A stretch of DNA of 63,931 nt, counting the filler, from Octopus bimaculoides (taxonomy: Eukaryota): assembly GCF_001194135.2 (NCBI RefSeq). It is 8 parts of 7 records of this genome, joined end to end, with 100 filler letters (N's around TTAATTAATTAA, not from the genome) between each part and the next. Parts side by side here need not be neighbours in the genome. Positions count along the whole stretch, not along the records: positions 3,633 to 13,675 come from NC_068985.1; 7 more parts are not named here. One strand, 5' to 3'. The position numbers and the translations under genes were made by a program. Numbering within the stretch: position 1 is the first letter of the stretch; each line of letters begins with the position of its first letter. The notes under the pieces were generated by a model. That model did no database searches. It was not told where the DNA came from and saw nothing but the letters and a program-made list of their open reading frames with translations. Positions 3,533 to 12,309 of this stretch are shown piece by piece.

Positions 3533-3716
3533 NNNNNNNNNNNNNNNNNNNNNNNNNNNNNNNNNNNNNNNNNNNNTTAATTAATTAANNNNNNNNNNNN
3601 NNNNNNNNNNNNNNNNNNNNNNNNNNNNNNNNCCGTATTCCCGAGCGTCATACTAATATATACTTTTGTTATTTACACCACCTGTCCTCGTCTGTTGTTA
3701 TTTTTTGTATATTCTC

Positions 3717-3756
<40 letters not shown>

Positions 3757-3912
3757 ACACATAATGTGATGAAAGGTGAATGGGCAAATGGAAAAGAAAT
3801 GGTGAAGAGAGAGAGAGAGGAGGAGGAGGAGGAGGAGGAGGGAGAGGAATATATGTTCCTTTCTTTTCAGTGCAATAAGTAGCTGTAGAAATACTGACAA
3901 TGACTGACTTAC

Positions 3913-4137
3913 CTTTCATACAAATATATTGAATCACATTTTTAGCATCAGGTCGGCAGATCTTTTGTGTATATCCGCTGAATTCAGGTGCACAGTTCTG
4001 TCCCTTGTTGCAATAATATCGTATCATGCCCATTATTTTCCAGTTTTGTTCTCCATTGTTTGTATAATTGCGAATGGCTATTTTGCTTCCAATCGAACAG
4101 TAAGGTTTCTCATAACAAATATCTGCCTCACAAAATC
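3913..4137 (-). CDS. Internal coding exon of an unidentified gene; Cys-rich, divergent sushi/CCP-like extracellular module
   Basis: On the minus strand: acceptor ttatttgatttattgcag, donor AAAG|gtaagt. The 225 nt are open, phase 1-1: FCEADICYEKPYCSIGSKIAIRNYTNNGEQNWKIMGMIRYYCNKGQNCAPEFSGYTQKICRPDAKNVIQYICMK (7 Cys, Y-x-C-x-x-G motif). Confidence 0.7.
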
Positions 4138-5225
4138 CTGCAATAAATCAAATAATTAGTACGTATGCAATACCATTCAGCTTTACTCTTCTCGTTATTG
4201 TTATCGTTGTTGTTAAGCACCTTGTCAACATTGATCGAGTAGACGTTCCCGCTGTAACTATTCAGACATTTATGAATATCACAGCTAAGAGCTGTTGCCG
4301 ATTGAATGAACTATATTTGAATATTACTTACGCCGATGCACACCAAATATGAAAGGCAAAGCCGACTCAGCGGAGATTTGAACTCCGAGATGTAACTGGT
4401 TACGCCCTTGAATAATTAGAGATGATTTGTATCTTTAAAATAGAGAATCCGGAAAGTAACTCAAAGCAACTGACTGTTGGGGGTCATGTTGCAGCGATGG
4501 CGATAATGGCAATGGAAGAGAGAAAGCGAGGGAGAGAGGTGGTCACATTGTTTGCTGTTGTAGGGGTTGTATTGATTACTGGTCAGACTGGTAAATGAAT
4601 AAACTGTAAAACTTACATAAAAACTGCCCTTATTCGTATCAGTTTTTGTTACAGTTAATGCTCAGACCATGCGATCCATATATAGTTTCTGTAACGACTT
4701 TAATCGTTCTATAACTGGATGACATTCAGTAACTCATCTGAGTGATAAAATTGCTACTAGTCTCTCGACAAAGTGAACTGAGACAAGAAAGAGTTGTATC
4801 CTGTACTGCGGCACAATACAGGATAAAGTTTGTATACATGATCCTTTATTTAGTAGTCTTATGCTTTATAACCCGTATGCTTAACTCGGTTACAAATACT
4901 AATACTGATGAGTTTGTTCTTTTTTGTGGTTACTTTTAATTTCAAGCTATTTAACTGCTTTATCCATCGAGCTCCGAACTTTTGGTAGTGGAATACTTTA
5001 ATTGTGCGCATCGTTGACTTTATATTAGTTGCCTGTAAGATTCCACAGCGGAGTAGAAACAAGTGTTCCCAAAACAACAGTTTTGTCTTCCACCACACCG
5101 AAGGCAGTGTTGGAGTTACGTAATTAGAAACAGGTTTATTATTACCTATTTTACGTTGGCGAACTATGGGATTTACTCACAGTGATCTTCCTTGGCGAAC
5201 ATTCTAGAAGCTTCCAAGAAATCGG

Positions 5226-6310
5226 GGATCTTTCTGATTTGGCGGACACCATTTTTTATTTAGTGTTTATTTAGTGTGTTTTCTACCGAAACACTTTAAA
5301 ACTTCGTATACTTGTATGTTTTGTCTTATAGAACAGAGAAAAAGTTTTATATTCGAAGTTATTTCATGTTAAAAATTGTCGTATTTCGGTAATTTCAACC
5401 AATCACTGACGTCTATTCAGCTGAATACAGTTACTGCTGTTCTTTGTCAACAATAATTTGTGGCAGTGTATATATCGTTAGTCCCTGGTAATCCTTTTGA
5501 ATTAAGCACCAGTTATGCACTGGGATTAATATAATTGACTTACCCCTTCCCTCAAAAACCAGGCCTTGTGCCTATGATAGAAAGGTTTATTAGCTACTGC
5601 CAATATGCTTGAATTACACTATTCTACTTGCTTCAGTTGATTGGATAATAGCTAATAAGGGAATCAAGTCAACAAAATAGTTGAAAGAAAGGGCTTCCAA
5701 ACAGTTGCTTCATTTCCTAGAAATAGCAGCCAAATCTTCCTCAAATCAAACTCTACCATCATTTAGAAAATGTGCTACCGAGTACACAGTACATAGAAAA
5801 TTACCGAAAAATTGTTGAACAGATTTTCACGAAATGTGGCAAAAATACTCATTGGGTGAGCGGTTTGAAACGAGATTATCTAAAACCCTAACCCTAACCC
5901 TAAAACCCTAACCCTGACCCTAAAACCCTAACCCTAACCCTAACTCTAAAACCCGAACCCTAACCCTAAAACCAGTACAAACGCACGAACGATGTCATAA
6001 ATAACAGTACCGCCGATAGTTGTTGTTGACAAACAACAGCAGTAATTTTATTCAAAGGAAAAGATCCCCTTACACCGCCAGAACGTGTTGTTGTCAAACT
6101 ACGGCAGTTATTGTTTTCACCTCAATAGACGTTAGTGATTGGTTGAAATTACCGAAATACGACAACTTTTAACATGAAATAACTTGGAATATAAAAACTT
6201 TTTTTAACAAGGCTAAGAGAAAAAGATGTTTTATATGACACATTCTACCAGTATCCCAAGTTTGAAAGTGTTTGTTAGAAAACAAATGGTGTCCGCTAAA
6301 TCAGAAAGAT
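5226..6310. mobile_element. Foldback/MITE-like element with about 210-bp inverted arms
   Basis: 5226-5440 is an imperfect reverse complement of about 6100-6310 (e.g. gtcgtatttcggtaatttcaaccaatcact / agtgattggttgaaattaccgaaatacgac). Confidence 0.7.
5881..5972 (+). repeat. Interstitial telomere-like repeat (CCCTAA with CCCTAAAA variants)
   Basis: The 20-bp unit taaaaccctaaccctaaccc occurs about 3 times, followed by degenerate units. Confidence 0.9.
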
Positions 6311-7422
6311 CCAAAATCGGATTTGTGCCTCTTTTACTAATCTCATTGAGCCGTGGAATGTTCTAGAAGGTTTTTTAAGTCACCAGGGAGAACTAGAATT
6401 CTTTGAGGCCATATACTGAATAGCCGCGGGATTTCAGTCTCTTTTCGACTGTCGGTCTTCGACCTAAACACATATCTGTGTTTGAGAGCGCACAGTTTTT
6501 ACGATACGTGGCCTAAGCAAACGAATGCCTCCGACGAGCAGCCTAGTATTTCAAAGTTTTCAAGTCACACACCATGTGCATGACTTACTCTTTCACTTCA
6601 AGTAAATCTAAGTAGCGTTCGAAATCCTCTCGTACATTTTAATTCAACTTCCTCACACAGAACGCTTCATGTACCGCTTCACCCGAAGCATGTCATTGGT
6701 GAATTCCTACCTGTTCTGAATTATGTTAAATGATTTGTGAAGTTCAAGGAAATCTCTTTTGTTTATTCCAACAAAGAATGCTTTTGGCCTTTCGTAACAC
6801 GAGGATTTTTGCTTCTTAATTAATCCCTAGTTCCAATAGTAACAAGGCCATGTCATAGCCTTAGCTCTTATTACAGTGGTTGAATGTTCAAGGTTACAGT
6901 AACCAACTATCATTTGTAACAGCAGCATATAAATAGAACTTCTATTCGCACAAAACGCTTTTTTCTCACAGATGAAGATACGAAGAAGTGTCAAAAACAC
7001 TGGTCTTCGCTAAATTGATAAACATATATCAATATTTTCATTTTCTAGTATATTTTGCTAGTATAGTCTTAAACGCATATTAGATAACACGATAATAGCC
7101 ATACCTTCTTATATCTGGCAATCTGATACTGTATAATAAAGATATTGAGAGAAGTATTGTACATATTCTTTTACTAATTTAAAACTTTGGATTGCAGCTA
7201 GTCTGGGACAACACGTTCAAAGTATTCTCTAACCTTACAGAAGCTAGTACAACCACAACACTGGTTTAATTTTCCATCAATAGAACTAGGAAGATATAAA
7301 AAAATGTATGATAAACAGGATTTTTCATTGATATAAACTTAAACAAAAAGACGGACGAAGTCATATACACATCTATAAATATATACACATACACTCGCAC
7401 ACATATATTTATGTGTAACTTA

Positions 7423-8279
7423 TCTATAAAAGGCAGATTTTTCTCTGTGTGTGTGTGTATGTTGAAAATTCATACATTTACACAATTCCAAATTTCTTGA
7501 ATGAAAGAATCGGAATTAATATTCTAAATACCATAACTTAGGTCACAGCGTCATTTTCCCCCTCAAAATAACACACAATTACGAATAAAATCCATTAAAC
7601 TACACAAAATAACATTTTCCCCCCTAATAGAATCTAATTTCCTCTTTCTACTACCTTTACAAATCCTTTCAACTCTTACTTTCTCTTCTGAACCTTTACG
7701 AACGATCCAACAACAAATACAAAAAATACAAACTACGGAGCTTATGGACAACACATTGCAAATCAGTGAACTTCATTACAAAGAAGAGAGCTTGCTGGGG
7801 AAAGAAAGCAACCGGTTTAAAAAGACAGCAACAGACTGCAGCAATTCACCACATTCCAGAAGCTACTTTGAACATAATGCAAAATGGTGCATCAACATCT
7901 ACTGCCCAATCTGATAGAATTCTGGCTGAACTGTGTAGCAATAGATCGCCAGCAATTGCTCCATTAGAAATTGCCGTCCTACCTTCTGCGAAAAGGGATT
8001 ACCTTGCAATGTATAATCAAGGCAGCGCAAAAAGTTGTTTCGCACATGCATTTCTATAGTCAATTAGACGGATGAAATTTAAGTACGCTTAATAATTTTA
8101 CGCAAAACAGCCTTCACACTTTCCCTATTAATTTCATCGTCTTTTGAATTATGAACATATTTACATCATAGGGTTTTTTTCGTCGTAAGGCTTTCTTTTT
8201 TAGTTGATTTTCACCTAGCAAGACTTATCATAGATGGCGTAATAAGTCACACCCAGACAACGTCGGGTTATACTGCTAG
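7423..8279 (+). mobile_element. Non-autonomous Helitron
   Basis: Starts TC(TATAAAAGGCAG) after A and ends CTAG before T (A|T target). Subterminal hairpin cccagacaacgtcggg. Confidence 0.75.
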
Positions 8280-8508
8280 TATACTATATAATGTATATAT
8301 ACTATATATATAATACATAGTGGATATATAGATATAGATATAATGCATAAAAATATATCAATAAATAACCCCCCCCCCACACACACATGTATATACACAT
8401 GCATGTAGTTTTCTTTTTTAAATTAAAACTGAAGCCGAGAACTTGTCTCGCGGATCGAGTTTCACTCCATTGCAGAAGATAGCAATGGCGTGAAACTCAG
8501 TATACATA

Positions 8509-8546
<38 letters not shown>

Positions 8547-8699
8547 ACATAATACATATTTACACATGTGTAAGTATATATAAGGCAGAATATATAATAT
8601 AATGATATGATATAATAAGAATTTAGAGTTTATAAACGAATCCATGAAATCAATAAAATTAAAAATGGATTAAAACCTTCAAGTGATCAAGTGGCCAGA

Positions 8700-10600
8700 A
8701 CAAAAATCAGCACGATTGAGTTCGGGTATAATACAAATATAACAGGTATATTAGAGCAATCAATTATAGCTAAATGTAATCGAAAGTATGGGGAGAGGCC
8801 AGGAGGTGAGGTAATACATCGCATTATAAACATTAATAAATACATTAATAACACTAATAATTAAGCTTGAAGGAGATAGGTAGGAGGTGCAAGAGAATAG
8901 GATAGTTGGTAGTGGTTAAAATACACAGGGGCTAGAGGATTACGTAACCTGTTTAAAATAGTTAAATACTAGATAACTTTTATGCATACATGATAATCGA
9001 AGTTCCAGTCTATTAAGTAAGTTCTCATTGTCCCTATTCTTTGATATCTCATATAGTTCCGTGCAGCATAGAATACATCCATATCTATTGTTAGAATACG
9101 CTCAGACTCTACGAATGATGTTCCATATAATAACAAATTTAACATTATTATCCCTAAGTTCCAAAATTTTCGTAGATAATGAGATAATATTGGTCTTATG
9201 TCTGAGTTTAAATGAGTAAAGATGGTTGCGCAATCTTGCTTTGAAGTTGCAAGAGCAACCTATATAGGTAAATGCATTAGTATCAGTTATTATAATACTC
9301 TTATAAACTATATTTTTAGCTAAACAATCTTCACTAAGCGGACATTTGCTTTTATCGCGATAATTGCAGCCATTGGTAATCACCTTGCTATTATTATATA
9401 CCTCATAGCTAATATTACTAACTACCAATCTTGATATTATCGTGAGTATTGGTATTAATGTTTACGTAGTTTCCATAGTTGCCTATAAAGACTTTGTTTA
9501 CCTTATTCGTGCTCATTCCTAATACCAAGGCCATCAATCACCACGCTATGACTTACCCCACTAGAAATGTTATAACTAGAATAACTAACATCTTTATAGT
9601 CAGTAGACGGTAGGTTAGGGAGCATTAAAACGGTAGCTTGCTTATCAGTATCATTAAGCACGTTCGAAGTGCTTACCCTACTTGGTATTGCAACAGGTGG
9701 TAGTACAAATTCGGGTGTAGGAAGGCGAGACCCTGATTCATGACTCTTGCCAGTATGTGTACCCGATCGTGATAAACCAATGCTGTCGTAATTTACCGTT
9801 CTAAGTTATCTACCACTACTACTACTAATACCATTTCCAATACTGATACCATACGTTCTTCAATTAAAAGGTAAGTTAATACTGCTAGCACTAAGGGGAC
9901 ACTTCAAGTTTGTGTTACTAATATTTCTATTTCTATTTTGTACTGCTATTTTATTGTTATGAGCTAATGCAATATTTCTTTTATTTAGACCCGCCATTAT
10001 CGTGCCTACATTTGGGAGGGTAGAGTGCGAAACTTTAATTTTCCTACTAGAGTATATACTGCTGTATCTATGCAAGGGGAGATGGGGAAATTCTTTTCTC
10101 AAATATAGAATAGTTTATTATAGATATTTATGGTTATTGCGTCATTGAAAGGCAGCTTGAACCAGATTACATCATCATTGTGTAGTTCATTATTATAACT
10201 AAGTTCCCAAATTTTCGTAATGAGATAATATTGGTCTTATGTCTGAGTTTAAATGAGGAAAGATGGCTGCGCAATCTTGCCTTGAAGTTGCAAGGGCAAC
10301 CTATACAGGTAAATGTGTTAGTATCAGTTATCATAGCACTCTTATAAACTATATTTTATAAGAGTACTATCTAGAATTTCTAAACTTACGGTTGATTCTT
10401 AACTTATGTAATACATCCTTATTTTTATTACTATTATTATTGTCACCGATAATATTATTATTAACACTCATATTCATCTCGTCGATAGTATTATTACTGC
10501 CATCTATTTTACCTCTATTATTTAAATATTTATAGTTGTAATTTCTACATCACCGCTAAAACCATTTCCACCAGACCCAAAGATTAAGTTATCAGACAAT
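8700..10600 (-). mobile_element. Decayed Penelope-like element (GIY-YIG endonuclease and RT C-terminal region)
   Basis: 9102-9428 reads CNYRDKSKCPLSEDCLAKNIVYK...TYIGCSCNFKARLRNHLYSF. 9860-10102 reads KIKVSHSTLPNVGTIM, the PLE region before the endonuclease. The GIY-YIG segment is partly duplicated at about 10205-10357. Confidence 0.75.
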
Positions 10601-12309
10601 CTAACCTTATGTTCTTTAGTATCGTGCCTACGCAATTTAAGCAAGTTGTATCCAGTGATTTAAAGATTAAAAATAAAATAGTCTTTTCTTTTGAAGTTAG
10701 AGCAGGATATCTTATTCTCATCCCCTATTCTGTATTCTTACTCCCACTACAAATTATTCCCTACCTCTCTCCCCGCTCCTGTCACCCGAATGATTTTCCT
10801 GTGTAAACTACTGGCTAGGGTAAGCGAGTCATTTTTTTTTTTGTGAAGCTATCCAAGAATCATGAAGTTGCACATAATGTTGATTCTTGGAATGTTTTTT
10901 TTTAAATGTTTATTTCGCGTATATTCACCCGATGAAAACGTTTTTTTTCGCATGATGTAATAACTCCATTCATCAAAAAAAAAAAAAAACTAGTTTGAAA
11001 CAGCTGTAGTAAACGAACCAATTTCCATCTGTTGTTATTCATTTATTTTTCATCTTACTCTGAACCTGCAATTAGCGTGGATATGGAGTATGTGCAGTAC
11101 AATAGGTACAGTATGTGTTCATTGGTATAACCTTGAGACTCGTAGTATATTCAGTCAGGCGCTTGTGATCGTATACGAAACTGGAATTTTAATCCGTTTG
11201 TACTTCGGTATGTACGTATATGTTCCTATAATTTTGTTTTGTACACGATTGCTATTTCTTTGACCCGAACTTGGTGCTTTACTATTTAGGTAACTGATTC
11301 ACTTAAATCCTGAACTCTTATATATACATATATATATGCATAATGTTTAAATGTATCTTTTCTTTAATATTTATTTCTTTTCTTTTCATCCACTTTTTTC
11401 CTTATTGTAAGATACTTTACTGAAAGCAGTTATTCTCTTTTTCTATCTTTTCTTTCTTTATATTTTGTCCCTCTTTCTTTTCCTCCATTCGATCACTTCT
11501 TTTTCTTCCAACCATTACCACTATTCTTATTCTAATTCTAATTCTTTTCTAATGTGTAGCAATGGAATTGCAACTTCACAACATACGCACGAAGATGTAT
11601 GATGTGTATTGTGTATATATGTGTATATATATATATGTGTGTATGTGTGTGTGTGTGTGTGTGCGCGCGTAGTTAACTATATAATATACATTAGTATATA
11701 TATTCATATTTATATTTTGCCTTTGAATGTTTGTAGATATGTATGTATGTGTACGTTAGCGTTTGTATGTTTAGTGTACGCATGTACGTTTGTTTGTTAG
11801 TGTGTATAAGTACAGTGTGTTTATTTTTAGGCTATTTGATTTATGTAAGTGAATATGTTTATAATACACACATTTATATAGTTTAAATTAAAGTTATTTT
11901 ATCATTAATTGATTTATTCTGGGTATATACGTTTTTTCCTTCTAACTACAGTCATTTTTGAAACTTTGATTTTTGATTTAAGGTTTTCTTTGAACTCACA
12001 TAATCATCATTGAAAAAACTATTAGTCGAAAGGACCAATGAAAAGAAACCAATTTCAAATGTGTGTGTGTGTCAGAACTGTCCGAGGAACGGGAACGGGA
12101 AACTCTGAGTAGCAGTTTTTTTGTGATATTTTTGTGATGTTTTTGTAGCTTTAATAATAATAAAGCATACTACTCGACCTCCAGTATTCGAGTACCATTT
12201 CCCCCATCCCCACCTTGTTTCACATTTATCTGCTTACTTTGGTGTAACCCGCTCCTTTTTAAGAAAGTTTGAGCGACTCTACACAAGTAGGAAGAAAAAA
12301 ATGGAGCTC

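What the first reader, a model, noticed from the sequence alone, without database searches (positions are those of the whole stretch)
3913..4137. Intact antisense Cys-rich (sushi/CCP-like) exon upstream of the visible TPC3 exons: possible nested gene
Seen: a 225-nt, stop-free minus-strand exon with strong AG and GTAAGT sites, symmetrical phase 1-1 and 7 Cys, in non-repetitive DNA. Known: phase 1-1 exons are the standard shuffling unit of extracellular modules such as CCP and EGF. Inference: it belongs to a secreted or surface protein gene. The first TPC3 exon found (15800) is internal, so if the TPC3 5' exons lie left of 3913 this gene is nested antisense in a TPC3 intron. The spacing is atypical for CCP, so it could be a lineage-specific domain.
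Basis: partly seen in the sequence, partly recalled or inferred. Interest (0 to 1): 0.7.

Follow-up and report, generated by a model that had tools for sequence, protein, structure and literature searches.

The report
Annotated octopus surface-protein exon
The flagged stretch is a genuine coding exon, but it is already annotated: it encodes one cysteine-rich extracellular module of an uncharacterised, cephalopod-only membrane protein of Octopus bimaculoides (LOC106872169), and it is not a sushi/CCP domain or a new nested gene.

Summary
Window 4137..3913 (minus strand) is a 225-nt stop-free exon with a pyrimidine tract plus AG, a GTAAGT donor, phase 1-1 and 7 Cys. By these criteria it is the only exon-like candidate in the 10-kb piece (0.11 expected by chance; 0 of 300 simulations with 7 or more Cys).

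Its 74 codons are 100% identical to residues 162-235 of Octopus bimaculoides XP_014774538.1 (LOC106872169, UniProt name "CUB domain-containing protein"). Identity stops exactly at both splice sites. The exon is in all six O. bimaculoides protein sequences compared (RefSeq isoforms X1-X5 and one further UniProt entry). It is conserved in O. sinensis, O. vulgaris, Argonauta hians and a more distant unnamed lineage known from transcript-like contigs, with all 7 Cys invariant.

The protein is a type I membrane protein: signal peptide, Cys-rich module D1, Thr/Ser-rich linker, this module (D2), a CUB-like domain, a stalk, a transmembrane helix and a tail. D1 and the CUB-like domain are also single phase 1-1 exons in a related octopod.

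Sushi/CCP is not supported. D2 matches no Pfam family. Weak but concordant evidence points to a degenerate SUEL/rhamnose-binding-lectin-like fold. No other gene is called within the 126-kb gene plus 10 kb on each side, so nesting is unsupported.

This is an already annotated exon of low interest. The unclassified module is the only mildly novel part.

The parts
3913..4137 (-). Coding exon of Octopus bimaculoides LOC106872169. It is 225 nt, phase 1-1. It encodes residues F162-K235 in full, plus two bases of the G161 codon and the first base of the E236 codon. This is Cys-rich extracellular module D2, with 7 invariant Cys and an NYT glycosylation sequon.
   Evidence: sequence and translation. 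(100% identity to P0009 = XP_014774538.1, ending at the splice sites). (present in all six O. bimaculoides protein sequences compared: RefSeq isoforms X1-X5 and one UniProt-only entry).
4138..4161 (-). 3' splice-site region of the upstream intron. It holds a branch-point-like TACTAAT (4161-4155), a T-rich tract (4155-4140) and the acceptor AG (4139-4138).
   Evidence: read directly from the sequence. The branch point is inferred from the consensus only.
3907..3912 (-). 5' splice site GTAAGT, preceded by the exon's last bases AAG. This is a full consensus donor.
   Evidence: The protein match ends here (window read-through MKGKSV versus protein MKEKIT).
4162..13675 (-). Part of the upstream intron, more than 9.5 kb. 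It contains no other exon of the gene. It carries repeats and retroelement debris.
   Evidence: tblastn with P0001 and P0002. (exact 5-mer scan with P0009)..
3633..3906 (-). Start of the downstream intron. The next exon (the CUB-like domain) lies beyond the edge of the piece. This stretch contains the (GAG)8 and (AT)18 microsatellites.

Best explanation
Window 4137..3913 (minus strand) is a constitutive internal coding exon of the Octopus bimaculoides gene LOC106872169 (XP_014774538.1; UniProt A0A0L8HA04, "CUB domain-containing protein").

The gene encodes a single-pass type I membrane protein. Its parts, in order, are: a signal peptide, Cys-rich module D1, a Thr/Ser-rich (probably O-glycosylated) linker, Cys-rich module D2 (this exon), a CUB-like beta-sandwich, a Ser/Thr-rich stalk, a transmembrane helix, and alternative long or short cytoplasmic tails.

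The exon is a self-contained module. One exon encodes one domain, and phase 1 at both ends keeps the reading frame on splicing. It contributes one disulfide-stabilised, N-glycosylated unit to the ligand-binding ectodomain.

Inferred, not shown: D1 and D2 are most likely strongly degenerate SUEL/rhamnose-binding-lectin-like (latrophilin Lec-like) alpha/beta modules. They have lost the YGR, DPC and KYL sugar-binding motifs and, in D2, the loop carrying two of the eight cysteines. D2 would therefore act in protein-protein or cell-surface recognition alongside the CUB domain rather than as a classical lectin. The conserved tail motifs (YVNG, DYALV, C-terminal NLAV) suggest a signalling or adhesion receptor.
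For: Shown:
- Exact splice-site anatomy.
- Uniqueness against chance.
- HMMER E = 4.6e-38 to O. sinensis P0001 and 4.6e-11 to P0002.
- 100% identity to O. bimaculoides P0009, with boundaries at the splice sites.
- Source names and accessions.
- The exon is in all six O. bimaculoides protein sequences compared, RefSeq isoforms X1-X5 and one UniProt-only entry.
- All 7 Cys and 24 of 74 columns are invariant across Octopus, Argonauta and the distant P0002 lineage.
- P0002 is an uninterrupted 513-aa ORF on 2.4-3.3-kb contigs from three sequencing runs. This implies spliced mRNA in which D2 is joined to D1 and the CUB-like domain.
- D1 and the CUB-like domain are each a single phase 1-1 exon in a related octopod.
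- The downstream domain has a CUB fold: Foldseek E = 4.7e-5 to the meteorin CUB domain, plus spermadhesins, BAI3, C1r, Kremen and neuropilin. It also carries the C1r CUB2 signature, phmmer E = 0.2.
- A transmembrane helix is predicted.

For the lectin-like fold (weak):
- The AlphaFold2 model of D2 has the order strand-strand-helix-helix-strand, pLDDT 66.
- Five of its ten best PDB fold matches are SUEL/RBL lectin domains (LAT-1 twice, SUL-I, latrophilin 1 and 3), but all have E above 2.
- hhalign against ten real RBL domains aligns D2's CNKGQNC with the RBL C5-C6 motif (E = 0.083). It aligns D1 co-linearly over 57 columns (E = 0.0077).
- In a separate local hhalign run (scores 19.9 for D1 and 15.6 for D2), column-shuffle controls give P of about 0.005 for D1 and about 0.05 for D2.
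Against: - The RefSeq model is a computational prediction. I could not inspect O. bimaculoides RNA-seq junction reads.
- The lectin-like assignment fails every sequence-level family test. There is no Pfam Gal_Lectin hit, no PDB sequence hit, and the fold-search E-values are not significant.
- The alignment is shallow (4-5 sequences), which limits model confidence. The full-length model is poor (pLDDT 33.6).
- D1 versus D2 similarity is marginal (E = 0.039 over 22 columns).
- D2 has an odd number of Cys (7), so the disulfide scheme is unresolved.
- Function is inferred from architecture alone. No paper mentions the gene.
Confidence: 0.9

Rival explanations
1. D2 is a genuinely new, cephalopod-specific cysteine-rich fold with no evolutionary link to SUEL/RBL lectin domains. 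The exon identity is as above; only the domain classification differs.
For: No Pfam family at E up to 10. No PDB sequence match. Foldseek E-values are all above 2. hhalign against RBL domains covers only 15-16 columns, with a shuffle P of about 0.05. A scan of 1.84 billion representative proteins found only two related clusters.
Against: RBL domains cluster among the top fold matches, which would be an unlikely coincidence. The CxxxxxC motif, the C-x-x-G-x-x-I-x-I strand and the terminal Y-x-C are co-linear with RBL domains. The sister module D1 scores P of about 0.005 against the RBL profile.
Confidence: 0.45
2. The exon encodes a sushi/CCP (complement control protein) module.
For: Only the general features: about 75 residues, Cys-rich, extracellular and phase 1-1.
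Against: No Sushi HMM hit. There are 7 invariant Cys rather than 4. The only Trp (W33) is not conserved in P0002 and does not lie between the last two Cys. The model contains two helices, whereas CCP is all-beta. No CCP structure appears among the fold matches.
Confidence: 0.03
3. The exon belongs to a separate gene nested antisense inside an intron of a host gene (TPC3).
For: None within the piece.
Against: The gene's own range is about 126 kb. No other gene is on record in that range or 10 kb either side. No plus-strand open frame in the piece has a credible domain hit.
Confidence: 0.03
4. It is a chance open frame or dead pseudo-exon that is not expressed.
For: Stop-free frames of this length are common in this AT-rich DNA: 37 of 60 or more codons occur in 10 kb.
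Against: The exon is 100% identical to an annotated protein, with boundaries at the splice sites. It is conserved to 41% identity, with all Cys invariant, in a distant lineage where it sits inside an intron-free transcript ORF. The chance expectation is 0.11 per 10 kb, and zero with 7 or more Cys.
Confidence: 0.01

Closest known systems
Octopus bimaculoides LOC106872169 (XP_014774538.1 and isoforms X2-X5; UniProt A0A0L8HA04) and its orthologues: O. sinensis LOC115211776, O. vulgaris CAI9722335.1 and the Argonauta hians protein
   Same: It is the same gene. The window exon is 100% identical to residues 162-235 of XP_014774538.1. It is about 89-90% identical to the O. sinensis protein and 72% to the A. 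hians protein.
   Different: Nothing differs. The gene has a name but no characterisation, and no paper mentions it.
SUEL-type / rhamnose-binding lectin domain (Pfam Gal_Lectin PF02140), e.g. the latrophilin Lec domain, C. elegans LAT-1, sea-urchin SUL-I and salmon CSL3
   Same: Similar size and mixed alpha/beta secondary-structure order. Co-linear C-x-x-G-x-x-I-x-I strand, C-x5-C motif and C-terminal Y-x-C. These domains are the top, though non-significant, fold matches. Like the latrophilin Lec domain, the module sits at the N-terminal end of a cell-surface receptor ectodomain.
   Different: No HMM hit. D2 has 7 rather than 8 Cys, and the loop carrying C3 and C4 is absent. The YGR, DPC and KYL sugar-binding motifs are not conserved (NYTNNG, RPD and VIQYIC in their place). 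Statistical support is marginal, so membership is not claimed.
Single-pass receptors that pair small Cys-rich modules with a CUB domain (Kremen: Kringle-WSC-CUB-TM) or that carry two SUEL-type lectin modules (C. elegans EVA-1 / human EVA1C)
   Same: The overall logic is shared: signal peptide, small disulfide-rich recognition modules, then (in Kremen) a CUB domain, a transmembrane helix and a cytoplasmic tail. The CUB-like domain matches Kremen's CUB by fold, E about 5e-4. The EVA-1 comparison is recalled from my own knowledge and was not tested.
   Different: No detectable sequence homology outside the CUB-like fold. The module types and their order differ. The family is restricted to cephalopods in the databases searched.
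Sushi/CCP module (Pfam PF00084)
   Same: Extracellular, Cys-containing, typically a phase 1-1 exon of about 60-75 residues.
   Different: The Cys number and spacing, the missing conserved Trp, the predicted helices and the absence of an HMM or fold match all disagree.

Membership tests
Sushi/CCP (PF00084) | Match to the family HMM | tested here: not met
   hmmscan against Pfam-A with E up to 10 gave no Sushi hit for the exon peptide, for four orthologous D2 sequences, or for the full-length proteins.
Sushi/CCP (PF00084) | Four invariant Cys (C1-C3, C2-C4) and a conserved Trp between C3 and C4 in about 60 residues | tested here: not met
   There are seven invariant Cys at positions 2, 7, 13, 42, 48, 60 and 72 of the 74-residue peptide. 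The single Trp (W33) is not conserved in P0002 and is not in the CCP position.
Sushi/CCP (PF00084) | All-beta sandwich fold | tested here: not met
   The AlphaFold2 model has two helices (residues 32-37 and 52-59) at pLDDT 66. No CCP appears among the Foldseek PDB matches. Model confidence is only moderate.
SUEL/rhamnose-binding lectin (Gal_Lectin PF02140) | Match to the family HMM or to sequences of solved RBL structures | tested here: not met
   No Gal_Lectin hit. No RBL chain was found by phmmer or hmmsearch against PDB sequences.
SUEL/rhamnose-binding lectin (Gal_Lectin PF02140) | Eight Cys forming four disulfides, plus the YGR, DPC and KYL motifs | tested here: not met
   D2 has 7 Cys. 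Compared with ten real RBL domains, the C3/C4 loop is missing, and the motifs read NYTNNG, RPD and VIQYIC. D1 has 8 Cys but also lacks the motifs.
SUEL/rhamnose-binding lectin (Gal_Lectin PF02140) | RBL alpha/beta fold | tested here: inconclusive
   Five of the top ten Foldseek PDB matches are RBL domains, but E = 2.3-8.3 and TM is at most 0.48. hhalign E = 0.083 for D2 and 0.0077 for D1. Shuffle P is about 0.05 for D2 and 0.005 for D1.
SUEL/rhamnose-binding lectin (Gal_Lectin PF02140) | Binds rhamnose or galactose | not testable with these tools
   This needs glycan-array or sugar-binding assays on recombinant D1 and D2.
CUB domain (neighbouring domain of the same protein, encoded outside the piece) | CUB beta-sandwich fold and the G-x-I-x-S-x-x-Y-P...C-x-W/F-x-I signature | tested here: met
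   Foldseek E = 4.7e-5 to about 1e-3 (probability 0.99-1.0) to the CUB domains of meteorin, spermadhesin, BAI3, C1r and Kremen (neuropilin and PCPE-1 follow at E up to about 4e-3). Non-CUB beta-sandwiches also match. GHIISIDYPKMMPPTSSVCNFKI aligns with the C1r CUB2 segment GYISSLEYPRSYPPDLRCNYSI. UniProt names the protein "CUB domain-containing". The Pfam CUB HMM itself did not hit.
Modular extracellular-protein exon (one domain per symmetrical phase 1-1 exon) | Phase 1 at both ends, with exon boundaries that coincide with domain boundaries | tested here: met
   The window exon starts with GA and ends with G and matches G161 to E236. The D1 exon (L006 903..1169, 267 nt) and the CUB-like exon (L004 292..615, 324 nt) are also phase 1-1.

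The most novel reading that the evidence does not exclude
D1 and D2 of this protein define an unrecognised, cephalopod-restricted and highly degenerate offshoot of the SUEL/rhamnose-binding-lectin fold. It has lost one disulfide loop and all sugar-binding motifs. It is deployed with a CUB domain in a single-pass receptor whose tail carries pYxN-type motifs. On this reading the protein would be a lineage-specific adhesion or signalling receptor comparable in logic to latrophilin Lec, EVA-1 or Kremen.
Probability: 0.35. Interest if true: 0.35.

Novelty: already known. Interest (0 to 1): 0.15.

Why it matters
It matters little for discovery.

The residual interest is modest. The gene family is confined to cephalopods in everything searched. 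It has no Pfam family for two of its three ectodomain modules, and nobody has published on it. If the lectin-like reading is right, it would be an example of a recognition fold degenerating beyond HMM detection inside a lineage-specific receptor.

There is also a practical lesson for the pipeline. The word-indexed protein search missed a 100%-identical database protein for this 76-residue query, while the full HMMER scan found it.

Tried and rejected
- Pfam on the exon peptide, on orthologous D1 and D2 sets and on the full-length proteins gave no credible family.
- PDB sequence searches with the single sequence and with profiles gave only chance hits: an OmpA-like protein, a viral capsid protein and p300.
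- The word-index homology search with the 76-aa peptide returned nothing. This was a false negative.
- tblastn and an exact 5-mer scan for other exons of the gene in the piece found none. The scattered 5- and 6-mer matches (for example MPPTSS at 6525-6542, plus strand) are judged to be chance.
- The full-length AlphaFold2 model was too poor (pLDDT 33.6) to say anything about D1 or D2. Only the CUB-like region and the transmembrane helix were usable.
- hhalign of D2 against three latrophilin Lec domains alone gave E = 0.15. Widening to ten RBL domains improved this only to 0.083.
- D1 against D2 gave E = 0.039 over 22 columns, so an internal duplication is not established.
- Rfam and tRNA scans of the piece found nothing.
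- Literature searches for the LOC identifiers, the SRA runs and the domain combination found nothing relevant.
- I could not identify the organisms behind the P0002 transcript contigs (SRR27666065 and others) or the octopod genomic contigs (SRR118693xx).

Full report
**The observation**

On the minus strand the sequence reads ...tactaattatttgatttattgcag|GA TTT TGT GAG ... ATT TGT ATG AAA G|gtaagt. The exon is 4137..3913 and is 225 nt long.
- It is preceded by a T-rich tract, an AG acceptor and a CTAAT branch-point-like motif about 19 nt upstream of the exon.
- It is followed by a perfect AAG|GTAAGT donor.
- It has 74 complete codons, no stop and 7 Cys.
- Two leading bases and one trailing base give phase 1 at both ends.

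An open frame alone is not remarkable here. There are 37 stop-free frames of 60 or more codons in the 10-kb piece. This one (130 codons if read through the splice sites) is the second longest. The combination is what stands out. I required a pyrimidine-tract AG, a GTRAGT donor, at least 180 nt and an open frame. This exon is the only such candidate on either strand of the piece. First-order Markov simulations give 0.11 candidates per 10 kb, and none of 300 had 7 or more Cys. No repeat overlaps the exon.

**What it is**

Pfam, PDB sequences and the word-indexed protein search all returned nothing for the peptide. The full HMMER scan of 1.84 billion representative proteins found two real relatives:
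- P0001: 656 aa, 90% identity over residues 1-73 of the peptide, E = 4.6e-38.
- P0002: 513 aa, 41% identity, E = 4.6e-11.

Searching with P0001 gave named family members:
- Octopus sinensis LOC115211776.
- Octopus bimaculoides LOC106872169 (XP_014774538.1; UniProt A0A0L8HA04, "CUB domain-containing protein").
- O. vulgaris CAI9722335.1.
- An Argonauta hians protein.

The window peptide is 100% identical to O. bimaculoides P0009 residues F162-K235. The match stops exactly at the two splice sites. Upstream read-through gives FIAG where the protein has PESG. Downstream read-through gives MKGKSV where the protein has MKEKIT. The split codons G|GA (Gly161) and G|AR (Glu236) fit the phase.

So the window is O. 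bimaculoides DNA, and the exon is already part of the RefSeq model. It is present in all six O. bimaculoides protein sequences compared, RefSeq isoforms X1-X5 and one further UniProt entry. These differ only in an 80-residue stalk insert and in long versus short cytoplasmic tails.

**Evidence that it is used and under selection**

All 7 Cys and 24 of 74 columns are invariant across Octopus, Argonauta and the distant P0002 lineage. P0002 and seven cluster mates come from assemblies of sequencing runs. There the 513-aa ORF, carrying D1, D2 and the CUB-like domain in one frame, is uninterrupted on contigs of 2.4-3.3 kb. Given a 126-kb gene in octopus, this implies spliced mRNA. I could not inspect O. 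bimaculoides RNA-seq directly.

**Gene context**

The gene spans about 126 kb on a 127-Mb chromosome record of assembly GCA_001194135.2. No other gene is on record in that span or 10 kb either side. No other exon of the gene lies in the piece. The upstream intron therefore exceeds 9.5 kb, and the next exon lies beyond the left edge of the piece. The nesting idea has no support, and the TPC3 exons belong to an unrelated piece.

**Protein architecture**

The alignment and the structure model give this order:
1. Signal peptide.
2. Cys-rich module D1 (8 Cys).
3. Thr/Ser-rich linker.
4. D2 (this exon).
5. A domain with the CUB signature GHIISIDYPKMMPPTSSVCNFKI. It aligns with C1r CUB2. It gives Foldseek matches to CUB domains of meteorin, spermadhesins, BAI3, C1r, Kremen, PCPE-1 and neuropilin at E from 4.7e-5.
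6. A Ser/Thr-rich stalk.
7. A transmembrane helix.
8. A tail that is highly conserved between Octopus and Argonauta, with YVNG, DYALV and a C-terminal NLAV. Reading these as motifs rests on my own knowledge of SH2 and PDZ ligand consensus sequences.

Genomic contigs from a related octopod show the D1 exon (L006 903..1169, 267 nt) and the CUB-like exon (L004 292..615, 324 nt). Each is bounded by AG and GTAAGT and is in phase 1-1.

**Domain identity**

Sushi/CCP fails every test:
- No HMM hit.
- 7 Cys instead of 4.
- No conserved Trp in the CCP position.
- Two predicted helices.
- No CCP among the fold matches.

Before any fold search I noticed that the pattern resembles the SUEL/rhamnose-binding-lectin skeleton: C-S-I-G-S-K-I-A-I-R-N-Y-T-N-N-G ... 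C-N-K-G-Q-N-C ... I-C-R-P-D ... I-Q-Y-I-C.

The AlphaFold2 model of the 74 residues came from a 5-row alignment and has pLDDT 66. Its order is strand-strand-helix-helix-strand. Five of its ten best PDB matches are RBL domains: C. elegans LAT-1 (two chains), sea-urchin SUL-I, and latrophilin 1 and 3. All have E from 2.3 to 8.3 and TM of at most 0.48.

I then took ten real RBL domain sequences from PDB alignments and ran profile-profile comparisons.
- D2 aligns only around the C-x5-C motif (E = 0.083).
- D1 aligns co-linearly over 57 columns through four Cys positions (E = 0.0077).
- In a separate local hhalign run, 5% of column shuffles of D2 and 0.5% of D1 reached the real score.
- D1 against D2 is marginal (E = 0.039).
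- The defining RBL features are not met: the HMM match, 8 Cys, and the YGR, DPC and KYL motifs.

I therefore do not file the module as a Gal_Lectin member. I give roughly even odds between a degenerate RBL-like module and an unrelated lineage-specific fold. In either case the loss of the sugar-binding motifs argues for protein or surface recognition rather than classical lectin activity. This last step is inference.

**Verdict**

The sushi/CCP label and the new or nested gene idea are not supported. The feature is already annotated and ordinary. The only mildly novel aspect is the unclassified, cephalopod-restricted module family.

Noticed in passing
window 5884-5969, with arms at 5339-5470 and 6071-6202: An interstitial telomere-like array lies in the intron: (CCCTAA)n on the plus strand, which reads TTAGGG on the minus strand, about 13 units. 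It sits between two 132-nt inverted-repeat arms that are 86% complementary and 600 nt apart. This may be a foldback or MITE-like element carrying telomeric repeats.
   Followed up: no
window 9105-9461 (-), and 9177-9316 / 10218-10357: An open frame of 119 codons has a weak GIY-YIG nuclease match (PF01541, E = 0.0035, below the curated cut-off). A 140-nt direct repeat, 93% identical, lies 1041 nt away and covers a second truncated copy (...YIGCSCNFKARLRNH... and ...CIGCPCNFKARLRSH...). These are probably Penelope-like retroelement remnants in tandem.
   Followed up: partly
window 3719-3754, 3817-3841, 8511-8544: Microsatellites: (AT)18 and (GAG)8 lie within 200 nt downstream of the exon's donor site, and (AC)17 lies further into the upstream intron. 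On the minus strand the (GAG)8 run reads as a CTC/CCT (polypyrimidine) run. It keeps the exon's frame open for 50 more codons, which inflates the apparent ORF to 130 codons.
   Followed up: yes
window 4330-4410 (-): The segment ...ccagttacatctcggagttcaaatctccgctgagtcggctttgcctttcat... contains a tRNA T-loop-like GTTCAAATC box. It resembles the tRNA-derived SINEs I recall as abundant in octopus genomes. ARAGORN and Rfam report nothing here.
   Followed up: partly
window 7631-8056 (+): This is the longest stop-free frame in the piece (142 codons). It has no Pfam match and no homology was examined, so it is probably repeat-derived or chance.
   Followed up: partly
tool behaviour (versus 15): The word-indexed protein search reported no candidate for the 76-aa query, although a 100%-identical protein (P0009) is in that database. 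The exhaustive HMMER scan recovered the family. Negative results from the indexed search on short exon peptides should not be trusted.
   Followed up: yes
P0009 and its isoforms (outside the window); L001-L003: The gene has alternative cytoplasmic tails. The long tail of about 210 residues carries conserved YVNG, DYALV and C-terminal NLAV motifs. The short tail reads ...NTSNAIVCGTSKPPPSNN. The distant P0002 lineage's transcripts carry the short-tail form. There is also an optional 80-residue stalk insert.
   Followed up: partly
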